A stretch of DNA of 64,000 nucleotides from positions 62,001 through 126,000 of the IMG/VR virus record IMGVR_UViG_3300034117_001294, one strand, 5' to 3'. A model generated the notes under the pieces. That model worked only from the letters and a program-made list of their open reading frames with translations, had not been told where the DNA came from and did no database searches. A program made the position numbers and the translations under genes. The first letter of the stretch is position 1; each line of letters opens with the position of its first letter. Shown here in pieces: positions 26,136-42,431 of the stretch.

Positions 26136-26195
26136 TAGGATCGGTTCAGCAAACAAAAAGCTAACTTTTGGTGTCTAGCGACAAAAACGATCCTG
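26136..26195 (+). ncRNA. CAGCAA-clamp RNA 1 (TTG anticodon-like loop)
   Basis: TAGGATCG-GTTCAGCAA...CGATCCTG; inner hairpin loop TTTTGGT. Confidence 0.7.
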
Positions 26196-26205
26196 TTATT
26201 TCTAT

Positions 26206-26284
26206 TCCGTGAAATCCAAGCATGGTGCAAGGACTTGACTGTTAATCAATGATTAGGTGAGTTCGATCCTCACACACGGAGCCA
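26206..26284 (+). tRNA. tRNA-Asn(GTT)
   Basis: CTGTTAA loop, GCCA. Confidence 0.85.
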
Positions 26285-26809
26285 TTCATTAATATCCCAA
26301 CGCTGATTAATCCTAAACAAGATTACAACCCGCGGAAGGATATTACAATTTTGAAAAGCATGTGGAACTTGTGTATTAACAATTGCAGGCTCATTTGTTT
26401 CCACTTTTCCAACAAACTCACAGTCACTGTGGTTGTATAGCATGTAGGTAACATTGCCTTGCCCTGTACCTTGTATTCTCGGCTCTGTAGTTGAAGAATA
26501 AAAATTTAGAAAAGTATTATCAAATCCAAGGATAGGAATGTTTAGACTATAAACAAACCCTCCTGTATCTTTGTGAATAGGATATGTTCCTTTAAGACTT
26601 ACGTTAATAACTGCATAATGAAGATATTGATATAGTCCGTATGTTTGAAGTTGTTCTTTGAGTTCTGGAATATCAGTAAACTCCGAAGCTTTAACATATT
26701 GAAATAAAGGCTCATTAAGTTTTGTATGTTTGAGAACAACATCAACCATTTTATTTCTAATGGTGTCAATGTTTTCAAACTTGATTGATCTATAAAGTGC
26801 CGGATCCAT
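26270..26809 (-). CDS. 2OG-Fe(II)/cupin-like oxygenase
   Basis: IHKD...SLNIP...PHAFQN...R. Confidence 0.65.
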   Translation of the reverse strand: MDPALYRSIKFENIDTIRNKMVDVVLKHTKLNEPLFQYVKASEFTDIPELKEQLQTYGLYQYLHYAVINVSLKGTYPIHKDTGGFVYSLNIPILGFDNTFLNFYSSTTEPRIQGTGQGNVTYMLYNHSDCEFVGKVETNEPAIVNTQVPHAFQNCNILPRVVILFRINQRWDINEWLRV

Positions 26810-26833
26810 TCCGATATTTATAGCAAGTATTAT

Positions 26834-26909
26834 ACCGTCGTAGTAATCTGGGTATTACACCTCCCTGTCTAGGAGATCAAGGCGAGTTCGATTCTCGTCG
26901 GCGGTGCCA
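26834..26909 (+). tRNA. tRNA-Asp(GTC)
   Basis: CTGTCTA loop, GCCA. Confidence 0.85.
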
Positions 26910-26913
26910 ATTT

Positions 26914-26976
26914 TAGGATGCGTTCAGCAAACTTTATACATTCAACTTTTAATTGAAAACGTAAAAAAGCATCCTG
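26914..26976 (+). ncRNA. CAGCAA-clamp RNA 2 (Lys TTT anticodon stem-loop)
   Basis: TAGGATGC-GTTCAGCAA...GCATCCTG; TTCAA-CTTTTAA-TTGAA. Confidence 0.75.
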
Positions 26977-26987
26977 TTTTATTTTGT

Positions 26988-27061
26988 TGGTCTATGGTGT
27001 AATGGTAACACAACAGACTTTGACTCTGTCGTTCCAGGTTCGAGCCCTGGTAGGCCTGCCA
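26988..27061 (+). tRNA. tRNA-Gln(TTG)
   Basis: CTTTGAC loop, GCCA. Confidence 0.9.
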
Positions 27062-27070
27062 ACAATTCAT

Positions 27071-27147
27071 ACCCGCGTAACTCAGTGGACTAGAGTACTA
27101 CGCTACGAACGTAGGAGTCGGAGGTTCGAATCCTTCCGTGGGTGCCA
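27071..27147 (+). tRNA. tRNA-Arg(ACG)
   Basis: CTACGAA loop, GCCA. Confidence 0.9.
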
Positions 27148-27715
27148 AGTACTTGGTTAGCATATTGATAGATCGTTGCATAGAGGGTCTATATACACAT
27201 CCATCTTTTAAAGATGATAATACTAGACTGATACAATATCTATCTTCGATAGGATTAATGATATTATGAGGTACTCCGACTTGCACAACTGAAGGAAATC
27301 CTATAGGGGCTGAAAACAACAAATCAACTTCAGTTCGATTATATCCTATGTAATGTGAGTTAACCGCAGATAAACTTTGCTCAGTGCGAACAATATTATC
27401 TTTTGGTTTGTACCAATTCATAATGCTGTTAGCACCTCCAAATATCCAATTTATTTTAGTAAAGTCTCCATGTTTAACATCAACATGTATACCGCTAAAA
27501 AAATTAGGAGTAGAGTAGAACACTTCGCAATGATCTGGAAAAATATCTAAATCTGCTAGCAAGTCTAGCATGTCCGAGTTAATATGTTCCTTGATACTAA
27601 TTGAAGAATGATAGGATTTTTTGCCATTAACTATGTTAGGAAGACTTGTTAAACTATGTTTGTTTTTTAACAAGTCAACATTAAAATTTAAGTTATGATG
27701 ATACGTTGTCATCAT
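27098..27715 (-). CDS. 2OG-Fe(II)/cupin-like oxygenase
   Basis: IHVD...KINW...WY...PHNIIN...RYCIS; 3' end runs antisense into tRNA-Arg. Confidence 0.65.
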   Translation of the reverse strand: MMTTYHHNLNFNVDLLKNKHSLTSLPNIVNGKKSYHSSISIKEHINSDMLDLLADLDIFPDHCEVFYSTPNFFSGIHVDVKHGDFTKINWIFGGANSIMNWYKPKDNIVRTEQSLSAVNSHYIGYNRTEVDLLFSAPIGFPSVVQVGVPHNIINPIEDRYCISLVLSSLKDGCVYRPSMQRSINMLTKYLAPTEGFEPPTPTFVA

Positions 27716-27740
27716 TTATTTACCGAAAGACTTATTAGGT

Positions 27741-27811
27741 GTGGCTATGTTGTAATGGTAGCAACCTAGACTGTGACTCTGGTAGTACGGGTTCGAGTCC
27801 CGTTAGTCACC
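27741..27811 (+). tRNA. tRNA-His(GTG), no encoded G-1 or CCA
   Basis: CTGTGAC loop, C73; flanked by a 10-bp inverted repeat. Confidence 0.85.
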
Positions 27812-27850
27812 CCTAATAAGTTTTTGCCACATTGTGGCACCAATAAATAC

Positions 27851-27942
27851 GGAAAGTAATGCAGGGGAGTTGGTTCCCCGACCAGCCTTGAAAACTGGGT
27901 TCTCAGAAATGGGATGGGGTTCGACTCCTCTGCTTTCCACCA
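27851..27942 (+). tRNA. tRNA-Ser(TGA), 8/4-type fold with long D stem
   Basis: GGAAAGTA/TGCTTTCC, CTTGAAA loop, 4-bp T stem. Confidence 0.7.
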
Positions 27943-27947
27943 ATAAT

Positions 27948-28460
27948 ATGAACGAAGATTATTTTATCCCTGTTAACACTGACATTAATTTTTTACCTAA
28001 AGTAAAAGAATTTATTCCGAATGCAATTTGGAAATGGGTTCCGTCTATGTTTATTGCTACAAATTTATCTAGTACGCACATCGGTGATGATCAATTACTG
28101 AGTAAAATTCATAAGGAATTTTTAGGAGAGTTAAATCTTTATAAAATTCCATGTAAATCTGTCTATGGATGGCACCAGGATAAAAATTCAATAGGGTGTT
28201 CATTAAATATGGCATTAGATCGATATCATTGTCATACATTGTTTTCAGTTGGGAATCACGGAACTCCTTTCTTACAAAAAGTAATTGAACTTGAGTACGA
28301 TCCTAATACATGGTATGCATTTAATTCAAAACAGGTGCATACTGTAATAAATCTAGACGAAAAAGATAGATATCTACTTTCATATGTACTACCGGGAATT
28401 TTTTCCTACACAGATCTAAAATCTTGGTTAGTACAGCATACATATACTTCTCTGATGTAA
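27948..28460 (+). CDS. 2OG-Fe(II)/cupin-like oxygenase
   Basis: WHQD...SLN...VHTVIN...RYLLS; start moved to ATG 27948 after the tRNA. Confidence 0.65.
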   Translation: MNEDYFIPVNTDINFLPKVKEFIPNAIWKWVPSMFIATNLSSTHIGDDQLLSKIHKEFLGELNLYKIPCKSVYGWHQDKNSIGCSLNMALDRYHCHTLFSVGNHGTPFLQKVIELEYDPNTWYAFNSKQVHTVINLDEKDRYLLSYVLPGIFSYTDLKSWLVQHTYTSLM

Positions 28461-28519
28461 TGGCAGCATAGCGGTCTCCAAAACCGTTCGTTGGGGTTCG
28501 AGTCCCTAGGGGAGTGCCA
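28446..28519 (+). tRNA. tRNA-Trp(CCA)
   Basis: CTCCAAA loop, GCCA. Confidence 0.88.
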
Positions 28520-28524
28520 GTTTA

Positions 28525-28639
28525 AGGATACATACAGCAATGTCTAACGACACGTTGGTTCGATTCCAACATTATCCGCTTTGGATGATTCGCTCAATGG
28601 TAGAGCAATGGGCTTCATGCCCATCGAAACTGTATCCTG
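28525..28639 (+). ncRNA. CAGCAA-clamp RNA 3 containing a circularly permuted tRNA (TCA anticodon)
   Basis: order T arm, closed acceptor, D arm, anticodon arm inside AGGATACA/TGTATCCT. Confidence 0.75.
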
Positions 28640-28648
28640 TTTTATTAT

Positions 28649-28726
28649 GTAGGGGTTCCAGAGAGGCTTAATGGCACTGATTGCAAACCAGTTGATTCGT
28701 GGGTTCAAATCCCACTCCCTACTCCA
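28649..28726 (+). tRNA. tRNA-Cys(GCA)
   Basis: TTGCAAA loop, U73 CCA. Confidence 0.88.
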
Positions 28727-28731
28727 TTTAT

Positions 28732-28805
28732 GCGTGGTTAGTTTAATGGTAGAACCAGACGTTGCCAACGTTTAAGCAGGAGTTCGATTCTCCTACCCCG
28801 CACCA
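28732..28805 (+). tRNA. tRNA-Gly(GCC)
   Basis: TTGCCAA loop, CCA. Confidence 0.88.
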
Positions 28806-28825
28806 AGTTAGTTGTAAATATTGTT

Positions 28826-29395
28826 ATGTATTTTGTTAAATTAAAAGAACAATTTTTTCTAACACTAGATGCAAATATTGCAAAAGAAGAATTTGCAAAT
28901 TTTGGATCTGTAATCGGCAATGAATTTAAAGGTATACAATATAATAGAATACCGCAGTATTGTACTGATACTATGTTAGAAGTCGTTCCGGAAAATTATA
29001 GAAAACATTTTACATCGGGCATTATGAAAATTAATGTACCGTATGCAAGACCACACACTGATAGCGGAGTAACCGCAGTATTAAATTTTTATGTACAGAC
29101 TGCTGATGCTGTGACAGTATTTTATAATCAGCTTACTGAAGATTCGGTTTTAACAAAGATAAAAAATCAAACTAACGGAAGTGTCTTTAAATTAAAAGAT
29201 CTAGTTCCTGCTGCAAATTTTAAAGCATTGCCGGGAGACGTTTGGTTACTGGATGTAACGAAGCCGCATTCTGTTATTGCTGCATCCGCAGTTGATAGAG
29301 TAGCATTCTGTTTACACACTAACAGTTTATCTTTCGAAGAAGTCAAAAAAATATTTGAATGCCCGGGTGGTGGAATGGTAGACACACTTTACTGA
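28826..29395 (+). CDS. 2OG-Fe(II)/cupin-like oxygenase
   Basis: PHTD...LNFY...PHSV...R; 3' end runs into a tRNA. Confidence 0.65.
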   Translation: MYFVKLKEQFFLTLDANIAKEEFANFGSVIGNEFKGIQYNRIPQYCTDTMLEVVPENYRKHFTSGIMKINVPYARPHTDSGVTAVLNFYVQTADAVTVFYNQLTEDSVLTKIKNQTNGSVFKLKDLVPAANFKALPGDVWLLDVTKPHSVIAASAVDRVAFCLHTNSLSFEEVKKIFECPGGGMVDTLY

Positions 29396-29446
29396 GGTAA
29401 GGAAAAACACTAGGATGTGAGAGTTCGAATCTCTCCTCGGGAACCA
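29361..29446 (+). tRNA. tRNA-Leu(GAG), degenerate anticodon arm
   Basis: Leu-type D arm, CTGAGG loop, T arm, CCA. Confidence 0.6.
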
Positions 29447-29451
29447 TGTAT

Positions 29452-29528
29452 GCCTTCGTACGCTAATTGGGAGTGCGGCTTGCCTTAGAAGCAGGTGGTT
29501 GGGGGTTCGAATCCGCCCGAAGGTACCA
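29452..29528 (+). tRNA. tRNA with TAG (Leu) anticodon, short variable loop
   Basis: CTTAGAA loop, CCA. Confidence 0.75.
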
Positions 29529-29666
29529 TTTTTGTTATCCCGTTTGATCCCAAAGTGTTCGCATAATGGGTAGGGTATCGAGCAGTGCGGCGATATAGTT
29601 GCCATTGCGTCGTGAGGTTGTGGAACAATAAACTGATAAAATCCACAATATAACAAATCTGTTTAT

Positions 29667-29743
29667 GCCCCGTTACGCTAATTGGTAGTGCGGATTCTCT
29701 CAAAAGGAGTTGGCTGTCTGTTCGAATCAGACACGGGGTACCA
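29667..29743 (+). tRNA. tRNA with CAA (Leu) anticodon, short variable loop
   Basis: CTCAAAA loop, CCA; D arm near-identical to the tRNA at 29452. Confidence 0.75.
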
Positions 29744-29748
29744 ATTAC

Positions 29749-29823
29749 AGTTCCTTATTTCAGAGGTAGAATATCACATTGACATTGTGAAGGTCACTGG
29801 TTCGATCCCAGTAGGAACTACCA
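29749..29823 (+). tRNA. tRNA-Val(GAC)
   Basis: TTGACAT loop, CCA. Confidence 0.88.
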
Positions 29824-29824
29824 A

Positions 29825-30400
29825 TTATATAATTAAAGGTTTGAAAAGCTCAACTATTTCTTCCCAAGTAGAAAATTTTGCAGTTGCCCGAATGCTTAGA
29901 CACCAGCGAATATTTGCAATGTCCCGATTAGCAACATTATGAGGTATATTAGTTCTAACTAAACAAGGCCCTTCAATTCTAGCAGATTCAATGCAGACAA
30001 CATCGGCTCGATCAAAATGAATATATGGTGTGCCGCCGCTTGACATTTTAATATTATTTTGTTTACCGGGCAACGGGGAATACCAAAACATTTCTGAATT
30101 AGCAGACCCCCATACTATATTGATACCCCATACACAATGAGTAACTCCGTTAATAGTATCAATATGAATGTCTAGATTGCTGTTAGCATTACCTCTAAAA
30201 AAAATACATTCTGAAAGAATATCTATTCCGAAATTTTTAAAAAATTCAATAGACTCATCTGTAAGAAATTCTTTATGGTCAACTAACTTCATAGCCCAAT
30301 TGTGCTCTGATTTAGAATAAACCAAATCAATATAATGTTGCATGTCTATATTATCTTTTAATATTTTGACAGGAATATTTAATTTGTAATGGTTTTGCAT
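29825..30400 (-). CDS. 2OG-Fe(II)/cupin-like oxygenase
   Basis: IHID...GIN...WY...PHNVAN...RWCLS. Confidence 0.65.
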   Translation of the reverse strand: MQNHYKLNIPVKILKDNIDMQHYIDLVYSKSEHNWAMKLVDHKEFLTDESIEFFKNFGIDILSECIFFRGNANSNLDIHIDTINGVTHCVWGINIVWGSANSEMFWYSPLPGKQNNIKMSSGGTPYIHFDRADVVCIESARIEGPCLVRTNIPHNVANRDIANIRWCLSIRATAKFSTWEEIVELFKPLII

Positions 30401-30412
30401 TACGTATTTATT

Positions 30413-30487
30413 GCCCTAGTAGCTCAGTGGTAGAGCACCGTCTTGATAAGGCGGGTGTCCGTGGATCGTTCCCACGCTAGGGTACCA
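30413..30487 (+). tRNA. tRNA-Ile(GAT), unusual T loop
   Basis: TTGATAA loop; T loop ATCGTTC. Confidence 0.8.
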
Positions 30488-30506
30488 AAAAAAAAATAAA
30501 AAAGAC

Positions 30507-30575
30507 TTGACAGAGTCTTAAATAGACTGTATAATAAACACATACGCTAGCAACTGTTAGCACTGTTCTTTAAAA
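30507..30575 (+). promoter_or_regulatory. sigma70 promoter followed by boxB-like hairpin and boxA
   Basis: TTGACA-17-TATAAT; GCTAGC-AACT-GTTAGC; TGTTCTTTAAAA at 30564. Confidence 0.75.
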
Positions 30576-30591
30576 AGTTAAGTTGGTATTT

Positions 30592-30675
30592 GCCCCGGTG
30601 GTGTAATGGTAGCCACGCTGGTCTTAGAAGCCAGTGGAGAAATCCGTGTCGGTTCGAGTCCGACCTGGGGCACCA
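30592..30675 (+). tRNA. tRNA-Leu(TAG)
   Basis: CTTAGAA loop, long variable arm. Confidence 0.92.
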
Positions 30676-30790
30676 TATACAAACATACTATAGGTTGGGT
30701 TAGATTCGCGGTCTAACTATTTGGGTCTGTAGTGTAGCCCTCCAAAACTACACGCGACTAAGATACATAGTGTGTTTCTATATGGTGAAT

Positions 30791-30874
30791 GCGAGAGTGG
30801 AGAAATGGTATACTCAGGAGACTTAAAATCTCCCGTCGAAAGGCATGCGGGTTCGAGTCCCGCCTCTCGTACCA
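30791..30874 (+). tRNA. tRNA-Leu(TAA)
   Basis: CTTAAAA loop, long variable arm. Confidence 0.92.
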
Positions 30875-30883
30875 AACAATTAC

Positions 30884-30958: not shown

Positions 30959-30979
30959 AGTTTTTTATTAAGGATCAAA

Positions 30980-31405: not shown

Positions 31406-31469
31406 TAGGATCAGTTCAGCAAACATAATAAAAATTTCATTTATACTGAAACATAAAAAGTTGATCCTG
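31406..31469 (+). ncRNA. CAGCAA-clamp RNA 4 (TAT anticodon stem-loop)
   Basis: TAGGATCA-GTTCAGCAA...TGATCCTG; TTTCA-TTTATAC-TGAAA. Confidence 0.72.
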
Positions 31470-31478
31470 TTATTTTAT

Positions 31479-31570
31479 GCCCCTGTAGTTTAATGGTAGA
31501 ACAGCGGATTTATATCCCGTATGCAACAGATAATTGGTTAGTGTGGGTTCGACTCCCGCCGGGGGTACCA
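31479..31570 (+). tRNA. tRNA-Ile(TAT) with long variable region
   Basis: TTTATAT loop, CCA. Confidence 0.75.
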
Positions 31571-31728
31571 AGTTTTGAGATAGACGATGAGATGAGTCCC
31601 TTGTATTCTAGTGCCCTATTCTTGAGCATGACACACCAGTAGAATTGTACAAGGTCTGCATAAACTCTCTCATTCGAGACAACCCAGCGAGTCCTTAAGA
31701 AAGATAGTTGGTCTCTCAAAAACCTATT

Positions 31729-31789
31729 TAGGTTAATTACAGCAATAAAAAATGGCTGTCTGCTAGGACTTTAAACTAGTATTAACCTG
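31729..31789 (+). ncRNA. CAGCAA-clamp RNA 5
   Basis: TAGGTTAA-TTACAGCAA...TTAACCTG. Confidence 0.7.
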
Positions 31790-32081
31790 TTGAAAACCCG
31801 GTTTACTGTTTTACGTTATTAAAACAGCGTCCCTGAAACGATAGAACAGGGGGTACACTAGGACCTGACCTTACAGTCTTCTGTTCGGAGATACTGAAAA
31901 CTGCCTAGGGGCGGGAACAAAACCCGTCCAGATGGAAAAATTAGTGGACAGAGTAACCGCTCAGTTTGGGGCTCATGTGGTGTGAGTGGCTAGACACTTT
32001 ATTGAAATGCATTAGGTATCGTATCAAGTAGTGTAACTACTTTGCCAGCGGTGTTAGTGTGTTTCAATAAATAGATTTAAT

Positions 32082-32323: not shown

Positions 32324-32488
32324 ATAAACTCTCCCTTACATACGGAGTACAATGAGATAAGTAGTATGTAAACGAATTTAGACCGGACCTGTATCCATAC
32401 TCCGGTTCCGCTGAAGCGAAAACAGGATGGGCTGCTCTCACGGGGTTTGATGGTTTCCCGACACAACAATAATCATCAACAAGAATTA

Positions 32489-32806: not shown

Positions 32807-32924
32807 TAGGTTCTTTTCAGCAATTAAAAATAATCTTTCTGTAAAAAAGAGGGGCTGGGTTCGAATCCCGGGCGTGAGTTGGTCTTCACGTTGGTGTAGT
32901 GGTAGCACGTAAAAAGAGAACCTG
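32807..32924 (+). ncRNA. CAGCAA-clamp RNA 6 containing a circularly permuted tRNA (GTA anticodon)
   Basis: order anticodon arm, T arm, closed acceptor, D arm inside AGGTTCT/AGAACCT. Confidence 0.75.
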
Positions 32925-32955: not shown

Positions 32956-33183
32956 ATGGCACGTTTAACGTCACAAGCAGCGGTAGAGATGGTAGGTAAT
33001 CGTTTTGATCTAGTATTGATTGCATCAATTCGTGCTAGAGAATTAAAGCGTGGGCATATGCCTATGGTTACCTGTAATAACGGATTCAACGTCACTGCAC
33101 TTCGAGAAATTGAAGCAGGTAAAGTGGGACGTGATTATTTGGAAAAGCTTCGCAAGCCTCCTAAAAAGAGTGAACACTATTAA
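32956..33183 (+). CDS. rpoZ: RNA polymerase omega subunit
   Basis: MARLT...VGNRFDLVLIAS.RAREL...ALREIEAG; SD before ATG 32956. Confidence 0.85.
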   Translation: MARLTSQAAVEMVGNRFDLVLIASIRARELKRGHMPMVTCNNGFNVTALREIEAGKVGRDYLEKLRKPPKKSEHY

Positions 33184-35749: not shown

Positions 35750-36286
35750 ATGGAAGAATTTACTATGGAATTAACTGGGATGGATTTGGTCCATAAGGCC
35801 CAAGTTTTCGCTATTGCTGCTCACAGTGCCGTGGGTCAAAAGCGTAAGTATACCGGAGAACCTTACTTTGTTCACCCTGCAGAAGTTGCAAGGATTGTGG
35901 CAGAGGTTCCTGGCAGTACTGCTGAAATGGTAGCGGCTGCTTGGTTACACGATACAGTAGAAGATACCGGAGTTACCGCCACTGACATCCATATGAATTT
36001 TGGTCCGGAGGTTGCGGCGTTAGTTGGTTGGTTAACTGACGTGTCAAAGCCAGAAGATGGCAATCGTGCTCATCGCAAGGCCATGGACCGTGCTCACACT
36101 GCTGAAGCACCTGCTGAAGCACAGACTGTTAAGTTGGCAGATTTGATCTCCAACAGTCGTAGCATCATGGCACACGATCCTGCTTTTGCTAGGACTTACT
36201 TAGAAGAAAAGCGTTTGATGTTAGAAGTAATGACTCGAGGTGATCGTGGGTTGCACGCCGAAGCCAGCCGGTTCGTAGGTGTATGA
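35750..36286 (+). CDS. HD-domain hydrolase (SpoT/Mesh1-like)
   Basis: H..QKRK.TGEPY..HP, LHDTVED, VKLAD; own sigma70 promoter at 35696-35724. Confidence 0.85.
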   Translation: MEEFTMELTGMDLVHKAQVFAIAAHSAVGQKRKYTGEPYFVHPAEVARIVAEVPGSTAEMVAAAWLHDTVEDTGVTATDIHMNFGPEVAALVGWLTDVSKPEDGNRAHRKAMDRAHTAEAPAEAQTVKLADLISNSRSIMAHDPAFARTYLEEKRLMLEVMTRGDRGLHAEASRFVGV

Positions 36287-37294: not shown

Positions 37295-37762
37295 ATGCCA
37301 TGGATTGAAAATGTAGCCGCAGATGATATTCCGAAGAGATTTCATCACGAGGCAGGTGAGAACAGTATGCTGATCAGCATTGTTGATCCAGCAAGCTGGC
37401 GACCTACTCCTGCACACAAGTTCAAAGAAATTCACAATTTTGAATTTTTGGACGTCGAAGAAAAGGATGAGGTGCTGGAAGAAGCTATGAAGTGTAGTCA
37501 TGAGCAGGCCGCAGAGCTTGTTCGATTACTGCAACATGCACTGGAAAATAAGATGAACGTGGTTGTTCATTGCTATGCAGGTGTTTGCCGTAGTGGTGCT
37601 GTGTGTGAACTCGGAGTCATGATGGGCTTTGAAGACACTGGCCGCTTCCGTAGTCCTAACTTACTAGTTAAGCATCGCATGATGAAGTCATTAGGCTGGA
37701 CATATGATGCAGATGAAAAGCCAAACATTGATGATTGGCGAACTTTTAGAAGTGTAGACTAA
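37295..37762 (+). CDS. Cys-based (CX5R) phosphatase
   Basis: VHCYAGVCRSGA. Confidence 0.8.
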   Translation: MPWIENVAADDIPKRFHHEAGENSMLISIVDPASWRPTPAHKFKEIHNFEFLDVEEKDEVLEEAMKCSHEQAAELVRLLQHALENKMNVVVHCYAGVCRSGAVCELGVMMGFEDTGRFRSPNLLVKHRMMKSLGWTYDADEKPNIDDWRTFRSVD

Positions 37763-38637
37763 TGAAAGATCAGCAACACACATCCTCAAAGTTTCACACA
37801 CAGAATATAGTGTCGTATCCTTATGCAGAATACGGCATTAAGGGAGTCGGTAAGAATCGACTCCCTATTTTGTCAATGGACAAATATATTGATCACAGTC
37901 AAGACCAAAAACTTCATATCGAATGTTGCAAAGGTCTTGCATTAAACGAAGAATATAAAATGGGGATGACCTACGGAGCATTACCCCCAGAAGAAGTTGC
38001 CAGGTTTGGTGGACACGATTGTTGGAGTGAGATGCTTCAGCAACTGCATAAGTACGATCCAACAGGAGTGCATCGAGAAGCTCTTAAAGAAGTTATTGAT
38101 CGAAGTCCCGGAAAAGAAATGCAGGCAATGTACAAATATGCTTATTTTGCCATGGGTGCAGTTATTCCGTGGTTCTTTGCATTGTACTTAAAGAAAAATG
38201 ATTTTGGAAAGAAAACAGAGGACTTTGGGCAATGGACCGAAGCTGCAAAATTGTTTCCTAATGTAGTTGAGTACATTAACCAACTGCCGTTTAAGACAAT
38301 TGGTCGAGTTTTATTTTTTACAACTTACCCAAATGCCGGAGTAGTAACACATCGAGACAGTGTTATGGCTGAACACAGTGATCACAATATCAATTTATTT
38401 TTTGCAAGTGGAAGTCGCCCTAGTTTTATTTGGGACGAAAAGGCTAAGAAAAAGATTTATCTAGATAGTGACGCTCGTAGCTACTTCTTTAATAACCGCG
38501 ACTACCACGGAGTTGACCCAGAACCAGTATTTCGATATACTTTAAGAGTTGACGGAACGTTTACTGACGAGCTATGTGAACAATTAGGATTGGAAGACGG
38601 CCGCACTTGGAAGTGGAGTTACGAAACTCCTGATTAG
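37762..38637 (+). CDS. 2OG-Fe(II)/cupin-like oxygenase
   Basis: THRD...DYHGV...YTLRVDG. Confidence 0.6.
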   Translation: MKDQQHTSSKFHTQNIVSYPYAEYGIKGVGKNRLPILSMDKYIDHSQDQKLHIECCKGLALNEEYKMGMTYGALPPEEVARFGGHDCWSEMLQQLHKYDPTGVHREALKEVIDRSPGKEMQAMYKYAYFAMGAVIPWFFALYLKKNDFGKKTEDFGQWTEAAKLFPNVVEYINQLPFKTIGRVLFFTTYPNAGVVTHRDSVMAEHSDHNINLFFASGSRPSFIWDEKAKKKIYLDSDARSYFFNNRDYHGVDPEPVFRYTLRVDGTFTDELCEQLGLEDGRTWKWSYETPD

Positions 38638-39254
38638 AGTTTACCGTGATCTGTTAGACCGAGTGTTTGATATGCCCACATTCTTTCGCTACATTGAAAA
38701 CATTTTAAACATCTACCTGTTACTTGTTCAGTACAGGTATGCGTTAGATTTGCGAGTGCCTGAATTTCAAGTTGATCAACAAGATCAACTATGTGTGTCT
38801 TGTACAGCATCATAAAAGGCATCTCTATTCTAGGATTACTATTAGATATAGGCCTGTTAGGAAACTGCCATTTTGGATCTCCCCAAGGTTGTGGCGGATT
38901 TTGATTGATGCCTATAAACAATTTTTCTATTTCTGGATACTTTATTAGAACATGTCTAATGCCTGTTTGATTAATCTGGGTATGATGAATATCCGGTGAC
39001 CCTACTTTGATAGGGTCAGGTAGTCGAATATTAAACAGTAGATTTATGTACTCAATGATACCGTCAATGTACGCATACGAGCCGTCGTGTTTGGCAATAT
39101 AAAAAGGTTGGATGCTAGCAGTAGGACAATCTTTAAGCATTAGATAGAGCAATACTGCACTGTCTAGTCCTCCGGACATCATTAACCCGTAAGCTGTATT
39201 CTGTTGTAAATTCACAACGATCTGTTTACCATCTATCCTTGACTGAATTTCCAT
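38634..39254 (-). CDS. QueC-like PP-loop ATPase
   Basis: SGGLDS; C..CxxCxxC (TC...RCLKCFQC). Confidence 0.65.
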   Translation of the reverse strand: MEIQSRIDGKQIVVNLQQNTAYGLMMSGGLDSAVLLYLMLKDCPTASIQPFYIAKHDGSYAYIDGIIEYINLLFNIRLPDPIKVGSPDIHHTQINQTGIRHVLIKYPEIEKLFIGINQNPPQPWGDPKWQFPNRPISNSNPRIEMPFMMLYKTHIVDLVDQLEIQALANLTHTCTEQVTGRCLKCFQCSERMWAYQTLGLTDHGKL

Positions 39255-39294
39255 AATGTTGTATAATTAAAGTATATTTAAAAGAAAAAGATTT

Positions 39295-39368
39295 GCTCCT
39301 GTAGTATAAAGGCAGTACACTTCCTTGGTAAGGATGAGAAGCTGGATCGTTCCCAGCCTGGAGCACCA
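39295..39368 (+). tRNA. tRNA-Thr(GGT), unusual T loop
   Basis: TTGGTAA loop; T loop ATCGTTC; promoter at 39239-39267. Confidence 0.8.
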
Positions 39369-39372
39369 AATG

Positions 39373-39447
39373 CGGCCATTAGTGAAATGGATATCATGCT
39401 TGTCTTCGAAACAAGCGGTGTGGGTTCGATTCCTGCATGGCCGGCCA
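39373..39447 (+). tRNA. tRNA-Arg(TCG)
   Basis: CTTCGAA loop, GCCA. Confidence 0.88.
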
Positions 39448-39451
39448 ATAT

Positions 39452-39961
39452 ATGTATTTTATTCCAATAACTACAAAAAACGTATTTTCATATCATCTAA
39501 ATCCAAATGTTGGAAATTTTTGGGGTGTTGTAGATTCCTCGCCTTATTTAAAAATGTTAGGATTGGAAGATTTAGTCGATGATGTATATACCCTTTCTAT
39601 TTGGTTGAGTCCAAACTCGAAAGACATAATACATAAAGATCAACGGCTAGACGGTACGGGAGTTCGTTGGTCATTAGTAGTAGCACCAATAGGTCATGAG
39701 GATGTTTCGATAGAAATTTTTGACCAGATAAATGATACAACTAATACCTTTCATCAAAATTTTCATAAAAGTTCTATACCTTTATTAGATGAAAATAACG
39801 CAAAATTAGTTGACCAATGGAGTATGAAAAATGGCAGTTGTATTTTTGATGCGTACAATTATTGGCATACTGTAGTAAATTCTACAGATCAATTTAAAAA
39901 TATTATCAGTATAAGATCGGATCATTTAGAATTAGAGAAAATATTAGAAAAGTTTTTATAA
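39452..39961 (+). CDS. 2OG-Fe(II)/cupin-like oxygenase
   Basis: IHKD...WHTVVN...ISIR; start at ATG 39452. Confidence 0.55.
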   Translation: MYFIPITTKNVFSYHLNPNVGNFWGVVDSSPYLKMLGLEDLVDDVYTLSIWLSPNSKDIIHKDQRLDGTGVRWSLVVAPIGHEDVSIEIFDQINDTTNTFHQNFHKSSIPLLDENNAKLVDQWSMKNGSCIFDAYNYWHTVVNSTDQFKNIISIRSDHLELEKILEKFL

Positions 39962-40036
39962 CCCGCTATAGTTCAATGGATAGAACGGGGACCTCCTAAG
40001 TCTCAGATACAGGTTCGATTCCTGTTGGTGGGACCA
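39962..40036 (+). tRNA. tRNA-Arg(CCT)
   Basis: CTCCTAA loop, CCA. Confidence 0.9.
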
Positions 40037-40077
40037 AACGTTGTTGTGATGAGTAAGAAAAGAAAGTAAAATTAACA

Positions 40078-40305
40078 ATGTATAAAGTAATAAGCAAAAA
40101 TAAATTGACATTAAATGAATGTCTAACATTAAGTGACGCAATGATATTTGCCAAAACTGTTGGCATGTTTGTAACAATTAAAGGTCCTGACTTTGAAATT
40201 GTAGGCATGTTCGGAGTTGACAGTGTGAAAGACGGCAAGTGCCCGGACGGTGTTGCATACGATTGGAACAAAGCCAGTCGTATTGGGGCACCGAAGCGTC
40301 GATAA
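40078..40305 (+). CDS. hypothetical protein
   Basis: 75-aa ORF between tRNAs. Confidence 0.55.
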   Translation: MYKVISKNKLTLNECLTLSDAMIFAKTVGMFVTIKGPDFEIVGMFGVDSVKDGKCPDGVAYDWNKASRIGAPKRR

Positions 40306-40308
40306 AAT

Positions 40309-40398
40309 AGTGGGTTGCCAGAGCGGTTTATTGGCACATCTTGGAAAGGTGCAGGTTGCGAAAGCGGCACAAGAGTTCGAATCTCTTACCCACTGCCA
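40309..40398 (+). tRNA. tRNA-Ser(GGA)
   Basis: TTGGAAA loop, long variable arm, GCCA. Confidence 0.9.
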
Positions 40399-40429
40399 GA
40401 CATTTTGGATAACAAACTTAAAAAATTTG

Positions 40430-40458
40430 TTGACAACAAGAGTTAATTAGTATATAAT
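40430..40458 (+). promoter_or_regulatory. sigma70 promoter for the clamp-RNA/DUF2828 unit
   Basis: TTGACA-17-TATAAT. Confidence 0.85.
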
Positions 40459-40495
40459 TAATACATAGCAAGCAGTAATGCAAGCTAAGAAGTTT

Positions 40496-41003
40496 TAGGT
40501 TAGGTACAGCAACATTCATTAACTATGAACTGTTAGACACTGTGGTAGAAACTGGAGCAGAGTGCGTAAAAACACCGAGCGTTGAAGGGGTCTATTGAAG
40601 CAAGACTAACGAGCACAGAGTGATGGCCTGTGTAAAATAAAAGCAGTCAACAACTAACCTGTTAAATCCTAGGATGGATTCAGCAACTTAAACAATAAAC
40701 TCTGAACTAACTGCTATAGAAGATGGTCGCAGGACACAGTAGAAATACTGTTCTAGGAAACTAGACTCGAAGGAATAGACGACACATTGGAAAGACTTTG
40801 TATGATGATTGTACAGACACAACACAATCTAGGCGACATGAATTGTATGCTAGGCTTGCGAGACTTGAACCGATATACTGGGGATGGGGGTAAGCAGAAA
40901 ATAAAAATCCGTCTCAGCCATCCTGTTGTAGTTAGGTTAATTACAGCAATTTTAAATTGTATCATTAAAACCCGTGGGAACAACAAAGCCCACATTTAAC
41001 CTG
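40496..41003 (+). ncRNA. three tandem CAGCAA-clamp RNAs (40496-40661, 40670-40925, 40933-41003)
   Basis: TAGGTTAG/CTAACCTG, TAGGATGG/CCATCCTG, TAGGTTAA/TTAACCTG, each with WCAGCAA. Confidence 0.75.
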
Positions 41004-41015
41004 AAGGAAAAGAAA

Positions 41016-42431
41016 ATGAACGCATTTGTAGAAGCCGTTAAAAACCAAGAAGCCCGTACTGCCAATGGCATGAAGGCTCGCAAATCTACTGCCAACGCAG
41101 TAGTTGATCTGTTCTTCAAGATCGGTGCAAGCCGTGGTAAGGACATCACTAAGGACTTTGTTGCCGCGTATGTGGAAGACAAAGATCTAGCCCTGCGTGT
41201 TGCACAATGGGCACGAGACGTTCGTGGAGGTTCCGGTGAACGTGAACTGTTCCGTAGCATCTTAAAGTATCTGGAAAAGCACGATCCAGCAGCCGCAGAA
41301 GTGCTGATGGACAAGATCCCAGAACTTGGTCGTTGGGACGACTTGTTTGTATTTGAGTCCAAAGCATTGAAGGCTAAGGCTTTCACACTGCTAGGCGATG
41401 CACTTCGTGCTCGCAATGGCTTGGCTGCAAAGTGGACTCCTCGTAAGGGTAAAGTCGCCGCAGAAATCCGTGATTTCTTTGGTATGACTCCTAAGCAATA
41501 CCGTAAGTCATTGGTAGCAATGACTACAGTTGTTGAAACACAAATGTGTGCCAACGACTGGGATAACATCAACTTCAACCACGTGCCATCCGTTGCGGCA
41601 GCACGTTACAAGAAGGCCTTCGGCCGTCATACTGAAAAGTTTGCGGAATACGTGGCTAAATTGGCTAAGGGTGAAGCAGGTGTCAAGGTTAACGCCGGAG
41701 CTGTTTACCCATACGATGTCTTGAAGGGCGTGATCAACCACTACGGTGGTGTCAAGTTCAACAAGACAGAACTGGACCACATTGTAGCACAGTGGGAAGC
41801 ACTGCCTAACTTTGTCGGTGATGCTAGCATCCTACCATTGGTAGACGTTAGCGGCTCTATGAGCACACCAGCAGGTAAGGGAAGTTCTTTCTCTTGTATG
41901 GATGTTGCTGTCAGCTTGGGCTTGTACCTTGCTGATAAGAACAAAGGTGTGTTCAAGGACACATTCCTAACATTTAGCGGTTCACCAGAACTGTTGACTC
42001 TGAAGGGTAATGTGGTTCAAAAGGCTGAACAAATGGTTAAGTCTAAGTGGGATATGAACACTAACTTGGTTAAGGCTATGGACAAGATCCTTAGTGTAGC
42101 TGTTAATGGTGCTGTTCCACAAGAAGACATGCCAAAGATGCTGTTGATCTTGAGCGACATGCAGTTTGACGCCTGTGCAAAGTACGATGACTCTGCTATG
42201 CAGATGATCAAGCGTAAGTTCACAGACGCCGGATACGATGTTCCAAACATTGTATTCTGGAATTTGAACGCTAGCGACAACGTGCCTGTCAAATATGACA
42301 CACGTGGAGCGGCATTGGTTAGTGGTTTTAGCCCAAGCATCGTGAAAGCGGTCTTGAGTGCGGACACTGAACAATTCACTCCAGAAGGCATTATGATGAA
42401 AACCATCATGGTTCCACGCTACGATCTGTAA
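41016..42431 (+). CDS. DUF2828-type helical + VWA protein (Ro60/TROVE-like architecture)
   Basis: RDVRGG.GER, GRWDDL, AKWTPR, MIDAS DVSGSM, SDMQFD, WNL; SD AAGGA before ATG 41016. Confidence 0.78.
   Translation: MNAFVEAVKNQEARTANGMKARKSTANAVVDLFFKIGASRGKDITKDFVAAYVEDKDLALRVAQWARDVRGGSGERELFRSILKYLEKHDPAAAEVLMDKIPELGRWDDLFVFESKALKAKAFTLLGDALRARNGLAAKWTPRKGKVAAEIRDFFGMTPKQYRKSLVAMTTVVETQMCANDWDNINFNHVPSVAAARYKKAFGRHTEKFAEYVAKLAKGEAGVKVNAGAVYPYDVLKGVINHYGGVKFNKTELDHIVAQWEALPNFVGDASILPLVDVSGSMSTPAGKGSSFSCMDVAVSLGLYLADKNKGVFKDTFLTFSGSPELLTLKGNVVQKAEQMVKSKWDMNTNLVKAMDKILSVAVNGAVPQEDMPKMLLILSDMQFDACAKYDDSAMQMIKRKFTDAGYDVPNIVFWNLNASDNVPVKYDTRGAALVSGFSPSIVKAVLSADTEQFTPEGIMMKTIMVPRYDL

What the first reader, a model, noticed from the sequence alone, without database searches (positions are those of the whole stretch)
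26136..42431. Family of Y-RNA-like clamp RNAs presenting tRNA mimics, linked to a Ro60-like VWA protein
Seen: nine elements share TAGGWTNN-NTWCAGCAA ... NNAWCCTG (26136, 26914, 28524, 31406, 31729, 32807, 40496, 40670, 40933; variant at 25390). The NN positions covary perfectly with the 3' strand (CG/CG, GC/GC, AC/GT, CA/TG, AA/TT, CT/AG, AG/CT, GG/CC, AA/TT), while CAGCAA is invariant and lies outside the clamp stem. The cargo differs: isolated anticodon stem-loops (Lys CTTTTAA, Ile TTTATAC, Gln TTTTGGT, weaker Tyr- and Ser-like loops), two permuted tRNAs and two long structured inserts. Three copies sit in tandem between a sigma70 promoter and the SD of the DUF2828/VWA gene. Known: Ro60/Rsr (TROVE+VWA) binds a conserved stem of Y RNAs, and bacterial YrlA RNAs carry a permuted tRNA-like domain. 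Inference: a modular RNP in which one protein displays a library of tRNA decoys or adaptors, perhaps to soak up anticodon nucleases or recruit RNA repair or decay enzymes. The clamp sequence differs from the canonical Y RNA Ro site.
Basis: partly seen in the sequence, partly recalled or inferred. Interest (0 to 1): 0.93.

Follow-up and report, generated by a model that had tools for sequence, protein, structure and literature searches.

The report
Phage handle-and-cargo RNAs with Ro60-like protein
The window holds nine genes for an uncatalogued family of small phage RNAs, each a constant "handle" carrying a tRNA-like "cargo". They travel across very distant phages with a Ro60-like protein, and their handle is almost the same as that of the unexplained Class I RNAs of social amoebae.

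Summary
Nine elements match the motif where 0.13 are expected, all on one strand. Each has a 7-bp end-joining helix that covaries, then single-stranded N-U-W-CAGCAA, and ends in G-U-U.

- **Cargo:** anticodon-stem-loop mimics, two capped circularly permuted tRNAs, and two large conserved structured domains.
- **Operon:** three elements lie between a perfect sigma-70 promoter and the ribosome-binding site of a DUF2828/DUF7788 gene, which ends at a terminator.
- **Protein:** its predicted structure (pLDDT 90) matches only Ro60/TROVE structures over its full length. The MIDAS motif is intact.
- **Co-occurrence:** a covariance model built without window sequences recovers eight of the nine elements, two of them only in part. 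It also finds elements beside the homologous gene in phages of Escherichia, Listeria, Mycobacterium, Campylobacter, Staphylococcus, Enterococcus, Bacillus, Klebsiella and Prevotella. It finds none in the T4 or T5 tRNA regions.
- **Not a known family:** no Rfam family reaches threshold. YrlA scores 26 bits against a cutoff of 69. The nearest match is Dictyostelium Class I RNA, at 40.1 bits against a cutoff of 41.5, with the same stem, motif and ends.

The most likely reading is a new Y-RNA-like partner family for a second Ro lineage. Binding to the protein and a counter-defence or decoy role are inferred, not shown.

The parts
26136..26195 (+). E1: handle plus short cargo with an imperfect Gln-like hairpin (loop UUUUGGU). 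It starts 5 nt after tRNA-Glu.
   Evidence: Covariance model R1: 50.8 bits, E 1e-9.
26914..26976 (+). E2: handle plus an anticodon-stem-loop mimic (5-bp stem, loop CUUUUAA, Lys UUU). It lies between tRNA-Asp and tRNA-Gln.
   Evidence: R1: 70.7 bits, E 1e-14. Weak RF01414 hit.
28524..28639 (+). E3: handle plus a circularly permuted tRNA in the order T arm, capped acceptor, D arm, anticodon arm. The handle sits where the variable loop would be.
   Evidence: ARAGORN reads a cloverleaf after permutation. YrlA RF02553 matches full length at 25.9 bits, below the cutoff of 69. R1: 28.9 bits.
31406..31469 (+). E4: handle plus an anticodon-stem-loop mimic (loop UUUAUAC, Ile UAU). It lies 9 nt upstream of tRNA-Ile(UAU).
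   Evidence: R1: 57.1 bits.
31729..31789 (+). E5: handle plus a small hairpin with the 9-nt loop GACUUUAAA.
   Evidence: R1: 40.6 bits.
32807..32924 (+). E6: handle plus a circularly permuted tRNA-Tyr(GUA) in the order anticodon arm, T arm, capped acceptor, D arm. The handle sits between the D arm and the anticodon arm.
   Evidence: ARAGORN calls tRNA-Tyr(gta) after permutation. R1 gives a partial hit of 24.2 bits.
40430..40458 (+). Consensus sigma-70 promoter (TTGACA, 17 nt, TATAAT) that drives E7, E8, E9 and the DUF2828 gene.
   Evidence: (12 of 12 positions).
40496..40661 (+). E7: handle plus a conserved structured cargo of about 150 nt and unknown identity.
   Evidence: Alignment A4 has 15 pairs kept through changes on both sides.
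40670..40925 (+). E8: handle plus a conserved structured cargo of about 240 nt and unknown identity.
   Evidence: Alignment A2 has 17 pairs kept through changes on both sides. No Rfam match.
40933..41003 (+). E9: handle plus short cargo. Its 3' strand abuts the Shine-Dalgarno sequence AAGGA, 13 nt before the ATG.
   Evidence: RF01414: 22 bits. R1: 35.8 bits. In most related loci the last element ends 13-17 nt before the ATG.
41016..42431 (+). Gene for a 471-aa DUF2828 + DUF7788 protein. It is Ro60-like: a HEAT-repeat ring plus a vWA domain with an intact MIDAS motif.
   Evidence: Pfam. PHROG 850. MIDAS residues D277, S279, S281, T349 and D381 are invariant. AlphaFold2 pLDDT 90.1. The six best Foldseek PDB hits are all Ro60/TROVE.
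42447..42468 (+). Intrinsic terminator (9-bp GC-rich stem followed by a T run) that closes the operon.
25388..25596 (+). Doubtful divergent member: a 10-bp terminal stem followed by GUCAGCAAG, without the AG/CUG ends.
   Evidence: R1 does not find it. Fold z-score -0.75. Weak permuted-tmRNA hit of 18.7 bits.

Best explanation
The nine elements are genes for small non-coding RNAs built on one plan.

**Plan of the RNA.** The constant handle is a 7-bp helix that joins the two ends, with 5'-A-G... pairing to ...C-U-3'. A single-stranded N-U-W-CAGCAA follows on the 5' side, and the RNA ends in G-U-U. The exchangeable cargo comes in three kinds:
- mimics of tRNA anticodon stem-loops;
- whole tRNAs that are circularly permuted, with the acceptor end capped by a loop so they cannot be charged;
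- conserved structured domains of 150-250 nt.

**How they are made (inferred).** Six copies lie inside tRNA polycistrons and would be cut out by the tRNA-processing enzymes. Three are transcribed from a consensus promoter as the leader of the mRNA for a Ro60-like DUF2828/DUF7788 protein.

**Most likely mechanism (inferred).** The Ro-like ring protein docks on the handle, as Ro60 docks on the conserved stem of Y RNAs. This would give a set of RNPs that present tRNA-like surfaces.
- The cargo would engage proteins that recognise tRNA anticodon arms or tRNA bodies. Host tRNA-targeting defence nucleases seem the most plausible targets, with RNA repair or decay enzymes as the alternative. That would make the system a phage counter-defence or RNA-surveillance module.
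- The handle of E9 touches the Shine-Dalgarno sequence, so protein binding there probably also feeds back on the protein's own translation.

**Shown here**
- the RNA architecture and its covariation;
- the linkage of the RNAs to the gene across phyla;
- the Ro60-like predicted fold.

**Inferred**
- binding of the protein to the handle;
- the processing route;
- the target proteins;
- the autoregulation.
For: **RNA family**
- The motif occurs 9 times where 0.13 are expected.
- In 83 sequences, 301 elements lie on the gene strand and 21 on the opposite strand.
- For the helix, 99.5% of cells pair. The covariation score is 0.774 against 0.188 in shuffles, reached by 0 of 500 shuffles, and it collapses when the partner strand is slid by 1-3 columns.
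- Model R1, built only from other phages, finds E1-E5 and E9 in full and E6 and E7 in part. It does not find E8, and it finds nothing else in the 64 kb.

**Linkage to the gene**
- In 78 of 83 loci, 1-4 elements lie within 700 nt upstream of the gene. In most of these the last one ends 13-17 nt before the ATG.
- The promoter and terminator bracket E7, E8, E9 and the gene.
- Elements sit next to the gene, on its strand, in these phages:
  - Synechococcus phage BUCT-ZZ01 and Cronobacter phage S13;
  - Escherichia phage HY02;
  - Listeria phage WIL-1;
  - Mycobacterium phage Archie;
  - phages of Campylobacter, Staphylococcus, Enterococcus, Bacillus, Klebsiella and Prevotella (Lak).
- A scan that started from the motif alone found 78 new viral loci. 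In them, 90 of 103 hits carry the matching 3' strand. A DUF2828 homologue lies within the roughly 9 kb fetched in 30 of the 78.
- The tRNA regions of T4 and T5 give no hit.

**Protein**
- The AlphaFold2 model has pLDDT 90.1 and pTM 0.88.
- The six best PDB matches are all Ro60, Rsr or phage phiRo60, with E-values from 6.5e-10 to 6.8e-08 and TM-scores of 0.47-0.66 over the full length.
- The MIDAS residues are invariant in 74 homologues.

**tRNA mimicry:**

**Functional hints from the literature**
- Bas63 gp130, a Felixounavirus homologue, counters the Ppl defence system (PMC11482910).
- A canonical phage Ro60 binds adjacent Y-like RNAs and host PNPase (PMC12135203).
- RtcB and RNA ligase genes sit beside the gene in Listeria phage WIL-1 and Serratia phage BF.
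Against: - No experiment or structure prediction here shows that the protein contacts the handle.
- The handle lacks the sequence features of known Ro-binding sites, and YrlA scores far below threshold.
- The protein does not match the Pfam TROVE model.
- Six of the nine copies lie 8-15 kb from the gene.
- Three of 15 lineages tested gave no model hit near the gene: phiM12, Serratia phage BF, and Vibrio phage nt-1, which has only a pattern match.
- The only reported defence that a homologue counters (Ppl) is predicted to act on DNA, not tRNA.
- In Dictyostelium, the one protein shown to bind the look-alike Class I RNAs directly is an RRM protein, Rnp1A, not a Ro-like protein (PMC7919456).
Confidence: 0.6

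Rival explanations
1. The RNAs are real, but the Ro-like protein is not their stable partner. Another protein, from the host or the phage, reads the handle. An RRM protein is one candidate, as for Class I RNAs. On this reading the Ro-like protein sits nearby because it surveys or degrades damaged tRNA-like RNAs in general.
For: - Dictyostelium Class I RNA with the same handle binds the RRM protein Rnp1A directly.
- Ro60 proteins also bind misfolded RNAs that are not Y RNAs.
- Many copies lie far from the gene.
Against: - Tandem elements stay next to the gene, on its strand, in about a dozen lineages with only 30-50% protein identity.
- The operon structure is shared.
- Positions 3-5 of the handle differ by lineage: AGGAU, AGACC, AAGAC and UGGNC. 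This is what co-evolution with a phage-encoded reader would give.
Confidence: 0.15
2. The elements are divergent members of the known YrlA / Y RNA family, so the finding is already described.
For: - E3 aligns to the YrlA model over its full length, with a local E-value of 7.5e-4.
- Y-like RNAs next to phage Ro60 genes are known.
Against: - The score is 25.9 bits against a gathering score of 69, and the match rests on the tRNA-like cargo, not on the handle.
- Seven of the nine elements have no tRNA body at all.
- The handle motif UWCAGCAA is absent from the YrlA consensus.
- The protein belongs to DUF2828, not to Pfam TROVE.
Confidence: 0.07
3. E3 and E6 are precursors of functional tRNAs encoded by permuted genes. 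The handle would be a cut-and-ligate signal that circularises the RNA. RNase P and 3' trimming would then open the acceptor loop, as in the red alga Cyanidioschyzon merolae.
For: - Removing the handle in silico gives tRNAs that ARAGORN accepts.
- Some relatives carry RtcB or RNA ligase genes next to the Ro-like gene.
Against: - Most elements carry only a 17-nt hairpin or a non-tRNA domain, so the handle cannot be a tRNA maturation signal in general.
- The E6 acceptor stem has G.U pairs at both ends and no encoded CCA.
- The window already encodes a standard tRNA-Tyr.
- The handle sits at different places in the two tRNA bodies.
Confidence: 0.05
4. The elements are repeats without an RNA function of their own: processing punctuation for the tRNA array, or a purely cis-acting leader of the DUF2828 mRNA.
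For: - They sit 5-12 nt from tRNA ends.
- E9 abuts the ribosome-binding site.
Against: - An invariant single-stranded octamer and conserved cargo types are kept across phyla.
- The large cargos covary.
- Most copies are not next to any coding start.
- The T4 and T5 tRNA arrays do without them.
Confidence: 0.04

Closest known systems
Ro60-Y RNA RNPs: bacterial Rsr-YrlA/YrlB and Thermus phage phiLo phiRo60-Yrl1/Yrl2
   Same: - A ring protein of HEAT repeats plus a vWA/MIDAS domain, here by predicted fold.
- Small RNAs encoded next to the gene on the same strand, often in tandem.
- A terminal stem as the presumed docking site.
- A module that mimics tRNA with a capped acceptor, as in E3 and E6.
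- A link to RNA repair genes in some genomes.
   Different: - The protein belongs to DUF2828/DUF7788, not to Pfam TROVE, and shares 12-14% identity with solved Ro60 structures.
- The handle sequence is different and the YrlA model fails.
- The cargo is far more varied: bare anticodon stem-loops and large non-tRNA domains.
- There are many copies per genome, scattered through tRNA arrays.
Class I RNAs of dictyostelid social amoebae (Rfam RF01414)
   Same: - A helix of 6-7 bp joins the two ends. It begins (A)AG and is followed by CUG(U).
- The conserved motif next to the 5' strand is CCUUACAGCAA in the amoebae and N-U-W-CAGCAA in the phages.
- Four of the five motif positions that are near-invariant across Dictyostelia (C6, C9, A10, A11) are invariant in the phage family.
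- The interior is variable and the stretch before the 3' strand is A-rich.
- The short form is about 50-65 nt.
- The Rfam model scores a phage element in L019 at 40.1 bits, E 3.6e-4.
   Different: - The hosts differ: amoebae against phages.
- The score stays just under the gathering score of 41.5.
- Phage elements also come with cargos of 100-250 nt and with tRNA-like cargos.
- Class I RNAs have a DUSE promoter and were reported as unique to Dictyostelia.
- Their known direct binder is the RRM protein Rnp1A.
- Whether dictyostelids have a DUF2828 protein could not be tested here.
Phage tRNA genes used against tRNA-cleaving defences (for example T5 tRNAs against PARIS)
   Same: - Location inside large phage tRNA arrays.
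- Anticodon loops of types that known anticodon nucleases attack, such as Lys, Tyr, Asn, Arg and Gln (literature list).
   Different: - These RNAs cannot be charged or read codons, because they have no free acceptor end or no tRNA body.
- If they act in defence it would be as decoys or baits, not as replacement tRNAs.
Stable RNAs of unknown function in the T4 (rnaC, rnaD) and T5 (RNA I-IV, RNA1-3, RNAX) tRNA regions
   Same: Small stable RNAs co-transcribed with phage tRNAs, some of them tRNA-like.
   Different: - They have no handle motif, and model R1 finds nothing in either region.
- To my knowledge neither phage encodes a DUF2828 protein.
Circularly permuted tRNA genes of Cyanidioschyzon merolae
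   Same: The gene order of tRNA parts is permuted, and a stem joins the transcript ends.
   Different: - In the alga the product is a working tRNA, made through a circular intermediate.
- Here the acceptor is capped, and the same handle carries cargos that are not tRNAs.

Membership tests
Ro60 / TROVE proteins | HEAT-repeat ring followed by a vWA domain (overall fold) | tested here: met
   The AlphaFold2 model has pLDDT 90.1. The six best Foldseek PDB hits are all Ro60, Rsr or phiRo60, with probability 1.00 and TM-scores of 0.47-0.66 over about 500-550 aligned columns.
Ro60 / TROVE proteins | MIDAS motif (DxSxS, T, D) in the vWA domain | tested here: met
   D277, S279, S281, T349 and D381 are invariant in 74 homologues.
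Ro60 / TROVE proteins | Sequence match to the Pfam TROVE model, or to solved Ro60 sequences | tested here: not met
   Pfam reports only DUF7788 and DUF2828. phmmer against PDB sequences finds nothing at E up to 10.
Ro60 / TROVE proteins | Binds a Y RNA stem on the outer surface and RNA 3' ends in the central hole | not testable with these tools
   This needs binding assays or a structure of the complex.
YrlA / bacterial Y RNA (RF02553) | Reaches the Rfam gathering score | tested here: not met
   The best hit is E3 at 25.9 bits against a cutoff of 69. The other elements do not match.
YrlA / bacterial Y RNA (RF02553) | Encoded within about 4 kb of the Ro gene on the same strand | tested here: met
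   E7-E9 lie within 520 nt upstream. The same holds in 78 of 83 related loci.
YrlA / bacterial Y RNA (RF02553) | tRNA-like domain with T arm, D arm and a closed acceptor stem | tested here: inconclusive
   Present in E3 and E6 and absent from the other seven elements. In E3 and E6 the handle leaves the tRNA body at other places than in YrlA.
Dictyostelid Class I RNA (RF01414) | Reaches the Rfam gathering score | tested here: not met
   Window E2 scores 23 bits and E9 22 bits. The best relative scores 40.1 bits against a cutoff of 41.5.
Dictyostelid Class I RNA (RF01414) | Short helix joining the 5' and 3' ends, with conserved AAG start and CUGU end | tested here: met
   The phage consensus is U-A-G...C-U-G-U-U with a covarying 7-bp helix.
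Dictyostelid Class I RNA (RF01414) | Conserved 11-nt motif CCUUACAGCAA next to the 5' strand, mostly unpaired | tested here: met
   U-W-CAGCAA sits in the same place. CAGCAA is invariant in 211-216 of 216 elements.
Dictyostelid Class I RNA (RF01414) | Length 42-65 nt, DUSE promoter, dictyostelid genome | tested here: not met
   The short elements are 50-75 nt, but others reach 255 nt. They have bacterial promoters and a phage genome.
tRNA | Cloverleaf with a free 5' end and a 3' CCA acceptor end | tested here: not met
   ARAGORN and the Rfam tRNA model do not call any element as it stands. E3 and E6 fold as cloverleaves only after in-silico permutation, and their acceptor stems are closed by loops.

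The most novel reading that the evidence does not exclude
The phage handle-and-cargo RNAs and the Class I RNAs of dictyostelid amoebae are one RNA family. On this reading they are the cognate 'Y RNAs' of the DUF2828/DUF7788 branch of Ro-like proteins. That branch occurs in phages of many bacterial phyla and in giant viruses of protists. It is also reported in mimivirus-like sequences and in plants. Class I RNAs would then not be an invention of social amoebae tied to multicellularity. They would be the eukaryotic outpost of an ancient, virus-borne RNP that presents RNA cargo.
Probability: 0.35. Interest if true: 0.92.

Novelty: new variant of a known kind. Interest (0 to 1): 0.85.

Why it matters
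- **A likely partner RNA for an uncharacterised protein family.** The family is large: 711 phage genome records and 6304 clusters at 50% identity. It includes phages used in the laboratory and in biocontrol, such as Felix O1-like, P100-like and Campylobacter phages.
- **An account of unannotated DNA in phage tRNA arrays.** These stretches would be genes for uncharged tRNA mimics. This points to a way of engaging tRNA-binding enzymes that differs from supplying spare tRNAs.
- **A testable candidate mechanism for a reported counter-defence.** Bas63 gp130 was reported to counter the Ppl defence system.
- **A lead on Dictyostelium Class I RNAs.** Their function has been open since 2004, and they were reported as unique to Dictyostelia. 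The handle match gives a concrete hypothesis to test.
- **A compact natural scaffold.** A handle of about 25 nt accepts cargos from 17 to about 240 nt. That may be useful for displaying RNA on a protein ring.

Tried and rejected
- **Rfam.** No family reaches its gathering score on any element. The only sub-threshold hits on the elements are YrlA and Dicty_Class_I_RNA.
- **T4 rnaC/rnaD and the T5 stable RNAs as relatives.** Rejected. They lack the motif and the model does not hit them.
- **The variant at 25390.** It is not recovered by the model and does not fold better than shuffles. A permuted-tmRNA hit there is weak at 18.7 bits, although a relative (L019) has a strong permuted tmRNA at 119 bits.
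- **ARAGORN on permuted E3 and E6 with the handle kept in.** Nothing was found. A first E6 construct with acceptor cuts that were off by 1-2 nt also failed.
- **DNA similarity to known phages.** No megablast match, so the window phage is uncultivated. Identical DUF2828 genes occur on IMG/VR contigs of 164-229 kb.
- **A looser pattern scan (6-bp stem).** It missed elements in distant phages that the covariance model found.
- **phiM12, Serratia phage BF and Vibrio phage nt-1.** No model hit within the 4-6 kb flanks. nt-1 has one long-cargo candidate found by pattern only.
- **Papers.** Avesson 2011 and Aspegren 2004 are not held, so the three other proteins that bind Class I RNA remain unknown to me. 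No paper on DUF2828 function was found.
- **Expression evidence from Listeria phage CKA15.** The one highly transcribed region with published coordinates maps by distance to a different unannotated stretch of about 500 nt, not to the clamp trio. I therefore do not claim expression evidence from that paper.
- **DUF2828 in dictyostelids.** I could not test whether they encode such a protein. The collections at hand hold no eukaryotic genomes, and the protein search lists only the closest hits, which are from phages or metagenomes.

Full report
**1. Context**

The window comes from an uncultivated large phage. It has no megablast match to 50,697 phage records. Identical copies of the key gene sit on IMG/VR contigs of 164-229 kb. 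Between about 24.5 and 40.4 kb it carries 38 tRNA genes, all on the + strand. Five perfect sigma-70 consensus promoters drive this region.

**2.

All nine are on the + strand, against 0.13 expected.

Reading the sequence and a pairing scan show that each copy is closed by a complementary strand ending in CCUG. The two free positions pair in all nine, and the W position covaries as well.

**3. The handle, defined from relatives**

I fetched 80 viral contigs that encode relatives of the neighbouring protein at 72-100% identity. A strict scan of these found 301 elements on the gene strand and 21 on the other strand. The 222 distinct sequences define the handle:
- Upstream flank: U-rich.
- Helix: 7 bp, reading A-U, G-C, R-Y, W-W, U-A, N-N, N-N.
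- 5' side after the helix: one unpaired base, then U-W-C-A-G-C-A-A. CAGCAA is invariant.
- Interior: variable.
- Before the 3' strand: an A-rich run.
- After the 3' strand: G-U-U.

On an alignment of 28 short elements from other phages (A3), 99.5% of helix cells pair. The covariation score is 0.774 against 0.188 in shuffles, reached by 0 of 500 shuffles. Sliding the partner strand by 1-3 columns destroys the signal. These sequences were picked with a pairing criterion, so two independent tests matter more:
- A motif-only scan of the viral collection (5' half only) gave 103 hits in 78 new loci. Of these, 90 have the exact 7-bp partner followed by G within 500 nt. My estimate of the chance rate is about 0.01 per hit.
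- Covariance model R1, built from A3 without any window sequence, recovers E2 (70.7 bits), E4, E1, E5, E9 and E3. It recovers E6 and E7 in part and does not recover E8. It hits nothing else in the 64 kb on either strand.

**4. Cargo**

- **Short elements.** They carry AU-rich 5-bp hairpins with 7-nt loops of the canonical anticodon-loop form C/U-U-NNN-R-N. In the window these are Lys UUU (E2) and Ile UAU (E4). Relatives add Thr UGU, Arg UCU, Ile GAU, Asn GUU, Cys GCA, Tyr GUA, Ser UGA/CGA/GGA, Gln UUG and Leu UAA. Such a hairpin is present in 34 of 89 distinct short cargos, against 0.58 in shuffles with a maximum of 3.
- **E3 and E6.** Each contains all four tRNA arms in permuted order, with the acceptor stem closed by a loop. 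After in-silico permutation and removal of the handle, ARAGORN draws a cloverleaf for both: E6 as tRNA-Tyr(GUA), and E3 with the loop CUUCAUG. The handle leaves the tRNA body at the variable loop in E3 and between the D arm and the anticodon arm in E6.
- **E7 and E8.** These carry domains of about 150 and 240 nt that are conserved in relatives, with 15 and 17 pairs kept through changes on both sides. They match no Rfam family. Their identity is unexplained.
- **The element just before the gene (E9 type).** In most relatives it has a 9-nt loop such as AAGCAUAUC.

**5. The neighbouring protein**

The ORF at 41016-42431 matches Pfam DUF7788 (E 2.7e-50) and DUF2828 (E 7.3e-27), and PHROG 850 'RNA-binding protein'. 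It has no sequence match in the PDB.

I built an alignment of 74 diverse homologues. In it the MIDAS residues of the vWA domain are invariant. With this alignment AlphaFold2 gives pLDDT 90.1 and pTM 0.88.

Foldseek against the PDB returns Ro60 or TROVE structures as its six best hits:
- Thermus phage phiRo60 (9KOP);
- Xenopus Ro60 (2I91, 1YVR, 1YVP);
- Deinococcus Rsr (2NVO);
- a Ro60/La complex (9NFA).

They align over the full length with E-values from 6.5e-10 to 6.8e-08. Every later hit covers the vWA domain only.

The family is large:
- 711 phage records;
- 6304 clusters at 50% identity;
- members in giant viruses of protists: Pithovirus, Cafeteria roenbergensis virus, ChoanoV1 and Marseillevirus.

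Others have already called it Ro-like. SEA-PHAGES annotations use that name. A Listeria phage paper makes the same call. A preprint reports that Bas63 gp130 counters the Ppl defence system.

**6. Linkage between RNA and protein**

*In the window.* A 12-of-12 promoter (40430-40458) is followed by E7, E8, E9, the Shine-Dalgarno sequence, the gene and a strong terminator at 42447-42468.

*In relatives.* In 78 of 83 loci there are 1-4 elements within 700 nt upstream of the gene. Three of the five loci without any have almost no upstream sequence on the contig. In most loci with elements, the last one ends 13-17 nt before the ATG.

*In distant phages* (30-51% protein identity), elements with the same plan sit beside the gene, on its strand:

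| Phage | Position relative to the gene |
|---|---|
| Synechococcus phage BUCT-ZZ01 | three tandem, upstream |
| Cronobacter phage S13 | in the tRNA region upstream and just downstream |
| Escherichia phage HY02 (Felixounavirus) | four, downstream |
| Listeria phage WIL-1 | three tandem, upstream |
| Mycobacterium phage Archie | three tandem, downstream |
| Campylobacter, Staphylococcus, Enterococcus, Bacillus, Klebsiella phages and Prevotella Lak phage | adjacent, found by R1 |

- The inner handle sequence differs by lineage (AGGAU, AGACC, AAGAC, UGGNC), while CAGCAA and the 3' G stay fixed.
- Cargo types recur. HY02 and S13 carry a permuted tRNA. Campylobacter and Klebsiella phages carry Ile- and Ser-type loops.
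- In the motif-first scan, 30 of 78 loci held a DUF2828 homologue within the roughly 9 kb fetched.
- phiM12 and Serratia phage BF gave no hit within 4 kb. Vibrio phage nt-1 gave only a pattern match.
- The tRNA regions of T4 and T5 are rich in stable RNAs of unknown function, yet they have no element.

**7. Comparison with known RNA families**

*YrlA.* The model aligns to E3 end to end, but at 25.9 bits against a cutoff of 69. The match is carried by the tRNA-like part. The elements are therefore not YrlA members.

*Dictyostelid Class I RNA (RF01414).* This was the unexpected result.
- It hits E2 and E9 weakly (22-23 bits). It hits a relative's element at 40.1 bits, with E 3.6e-4 for 61 kb searched against all 4227 families. 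The gathering score is 41.5.
- The published description matches feature by feature (PMC7919456):
  - a 6-bp helix joins the ends;
  - the flanks are a conserved AAG start and CUGU end;
  - the 11-nt motif CCUUACAGCAA lies next to the 5' strand and is mostly unpaired;
  - the interior is variable;
  - the length is about 60 nt.
- With the genomic A included, the amoebal helix is A-U, G-C plus five pairs and then G. That is exactly the phage plan.
- The paper concluded that the class is unique to Dictyostelia. Its one known direct binder is the RRM protein Rnp1A.
- I could not test whether dictyostelids encode a DUF2828 protein.

**8. Mechanism**

*Shown:* the RNA design, its conservation, its operon link to the gene, and the Ro60-like predicted fold.

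*Inferred by analogy* with Ro60-Y RNA and with the phage phiRo60-Yrl-PNPase complex:
- The ring protein docks on the handle.
- The cargos present tRNA-like surfaces to other proteins.

The cargos cannot be charged. Many are bare anticodon arms of types that anticodon nucleases attack. Together with the report that a homologue counters a defence system, this makes a bait or decoy role against tRNA-directed defences the leading idea. Recruitment of repair or decay enzymes is the main alternative. RtcB and RNA ligase genes next to the gene in Listeria and Serratia phages support that alternative.

Because E9's handle touches the ribosome-binding site at a conserved distance, the protein probably also represses its own translation.

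**9. Verdict**

This is a real, widespread and previously uncatalogued RNA family. It is best described as a new variant of the Ro60-Y RNA theme. The possible tie to amoebal Class I RNAs is what makes it worth pursuing.

Noticed in passing
window 32956-33180 (+): A 75-aa ORF just after E6 matches the RNA polymerase omega/Rpb6 family (Pfam PF01192, E 4.8e-13). A phage-encoded omega subunit is unusual.
   Followed up: no
L001 13580-13700 and 13713-13830; L002 13896-14016 and 14026-14138: In Synechococcus phage BUCT-ZZ01 and Cronobacter phage S13, tRNA genes just downstream of the DUF2828 gene have normal acceptor, D and T arms. An insert of about 45-55 nt sits where the anticodon loop should be. 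The insert is a conserved module: GUAGAAAA(A)CG, a small hairpin, then AUUCWGCA. S13 annotates them as a 121-nt 'tRNA-Ser' and as 'tRNA-OTHER'. They may be a second class of partner RNA.
   Followed up: partly
L084 about 4430-5000 (Listeria phage WIL-1): An unannotated region of about 500 nt, driven by its own promoter, lies 1.0-1.5 kb upstream of the DUF2828 gene. By distance it corresponds to the most highly transcribed region reported for the related phage CKA15 (26,236-26,727). It has no handle motif. It is probably a separate large structured RNA.
   Followed up: partly
window 40496-40925; alignments A2 and A4: The large cargos of E7, and of some E8 homologues, share a module: CUGGAG, a hairpin, then UUGAAGG. 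Both also share an A-rich run (GAAAAUAAAA or AAAAUAAAAGCAG) before the 3' strand. The identity of these domains is unknown.
   Followed up: partly
window 25250-25689; L019 1126-1385: A relative's contig carries a strong permuted (two-piece) tmRNA, at 119 bits. In the window a weak hit to the same model (18.7 bits) overlaps the doubtful 'variant' element. The window may hold a degenerate or divergent tmRNA there.
   Followed up: partly
window 29361-29446 and 31479-31570: Two odd tRNA genes. In one ARAGORN reads a two-base anticodon ('ga', type unknown). The other is a 92-nt tRNA-Ile(UAU) with a long extra segment.
   Followed up: no
window 24472-24556, 27851-27938, and the gaps at 24640-24890, 29530-29660, 30680-30790, 31570-31725, 31795-32080 and 32325-32488: Two weak hits to the tRNA-Sec model, below threshold. 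There are also several intergenic stretches of 100-290 nt inside the tRNA array that hold no called gene. They may encode further small RNAs.
   Followed up: no
window 35750-36283 (+), 38637-39254 (-), 43464-44888 (+): Neighbouring genes: an HD-type metal-dependent phosphohydrolase (PHROG 990), a QueC-like fragment on the opposite strand, and a B12-binding radical SAM enzyme just downstream of the operon. An HD-domain gene also follows the DUF2828 gene in Listeria phage WIL-1.
   Followed up: partly
PMC12282133 (Listeria phage CKA15): The CKA15 homologue of the DUF2828 protein was detected in purified virions, with 57% sequence coverage. The protein may therefore be packaged and delivered with the genome.
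   Followed up: no
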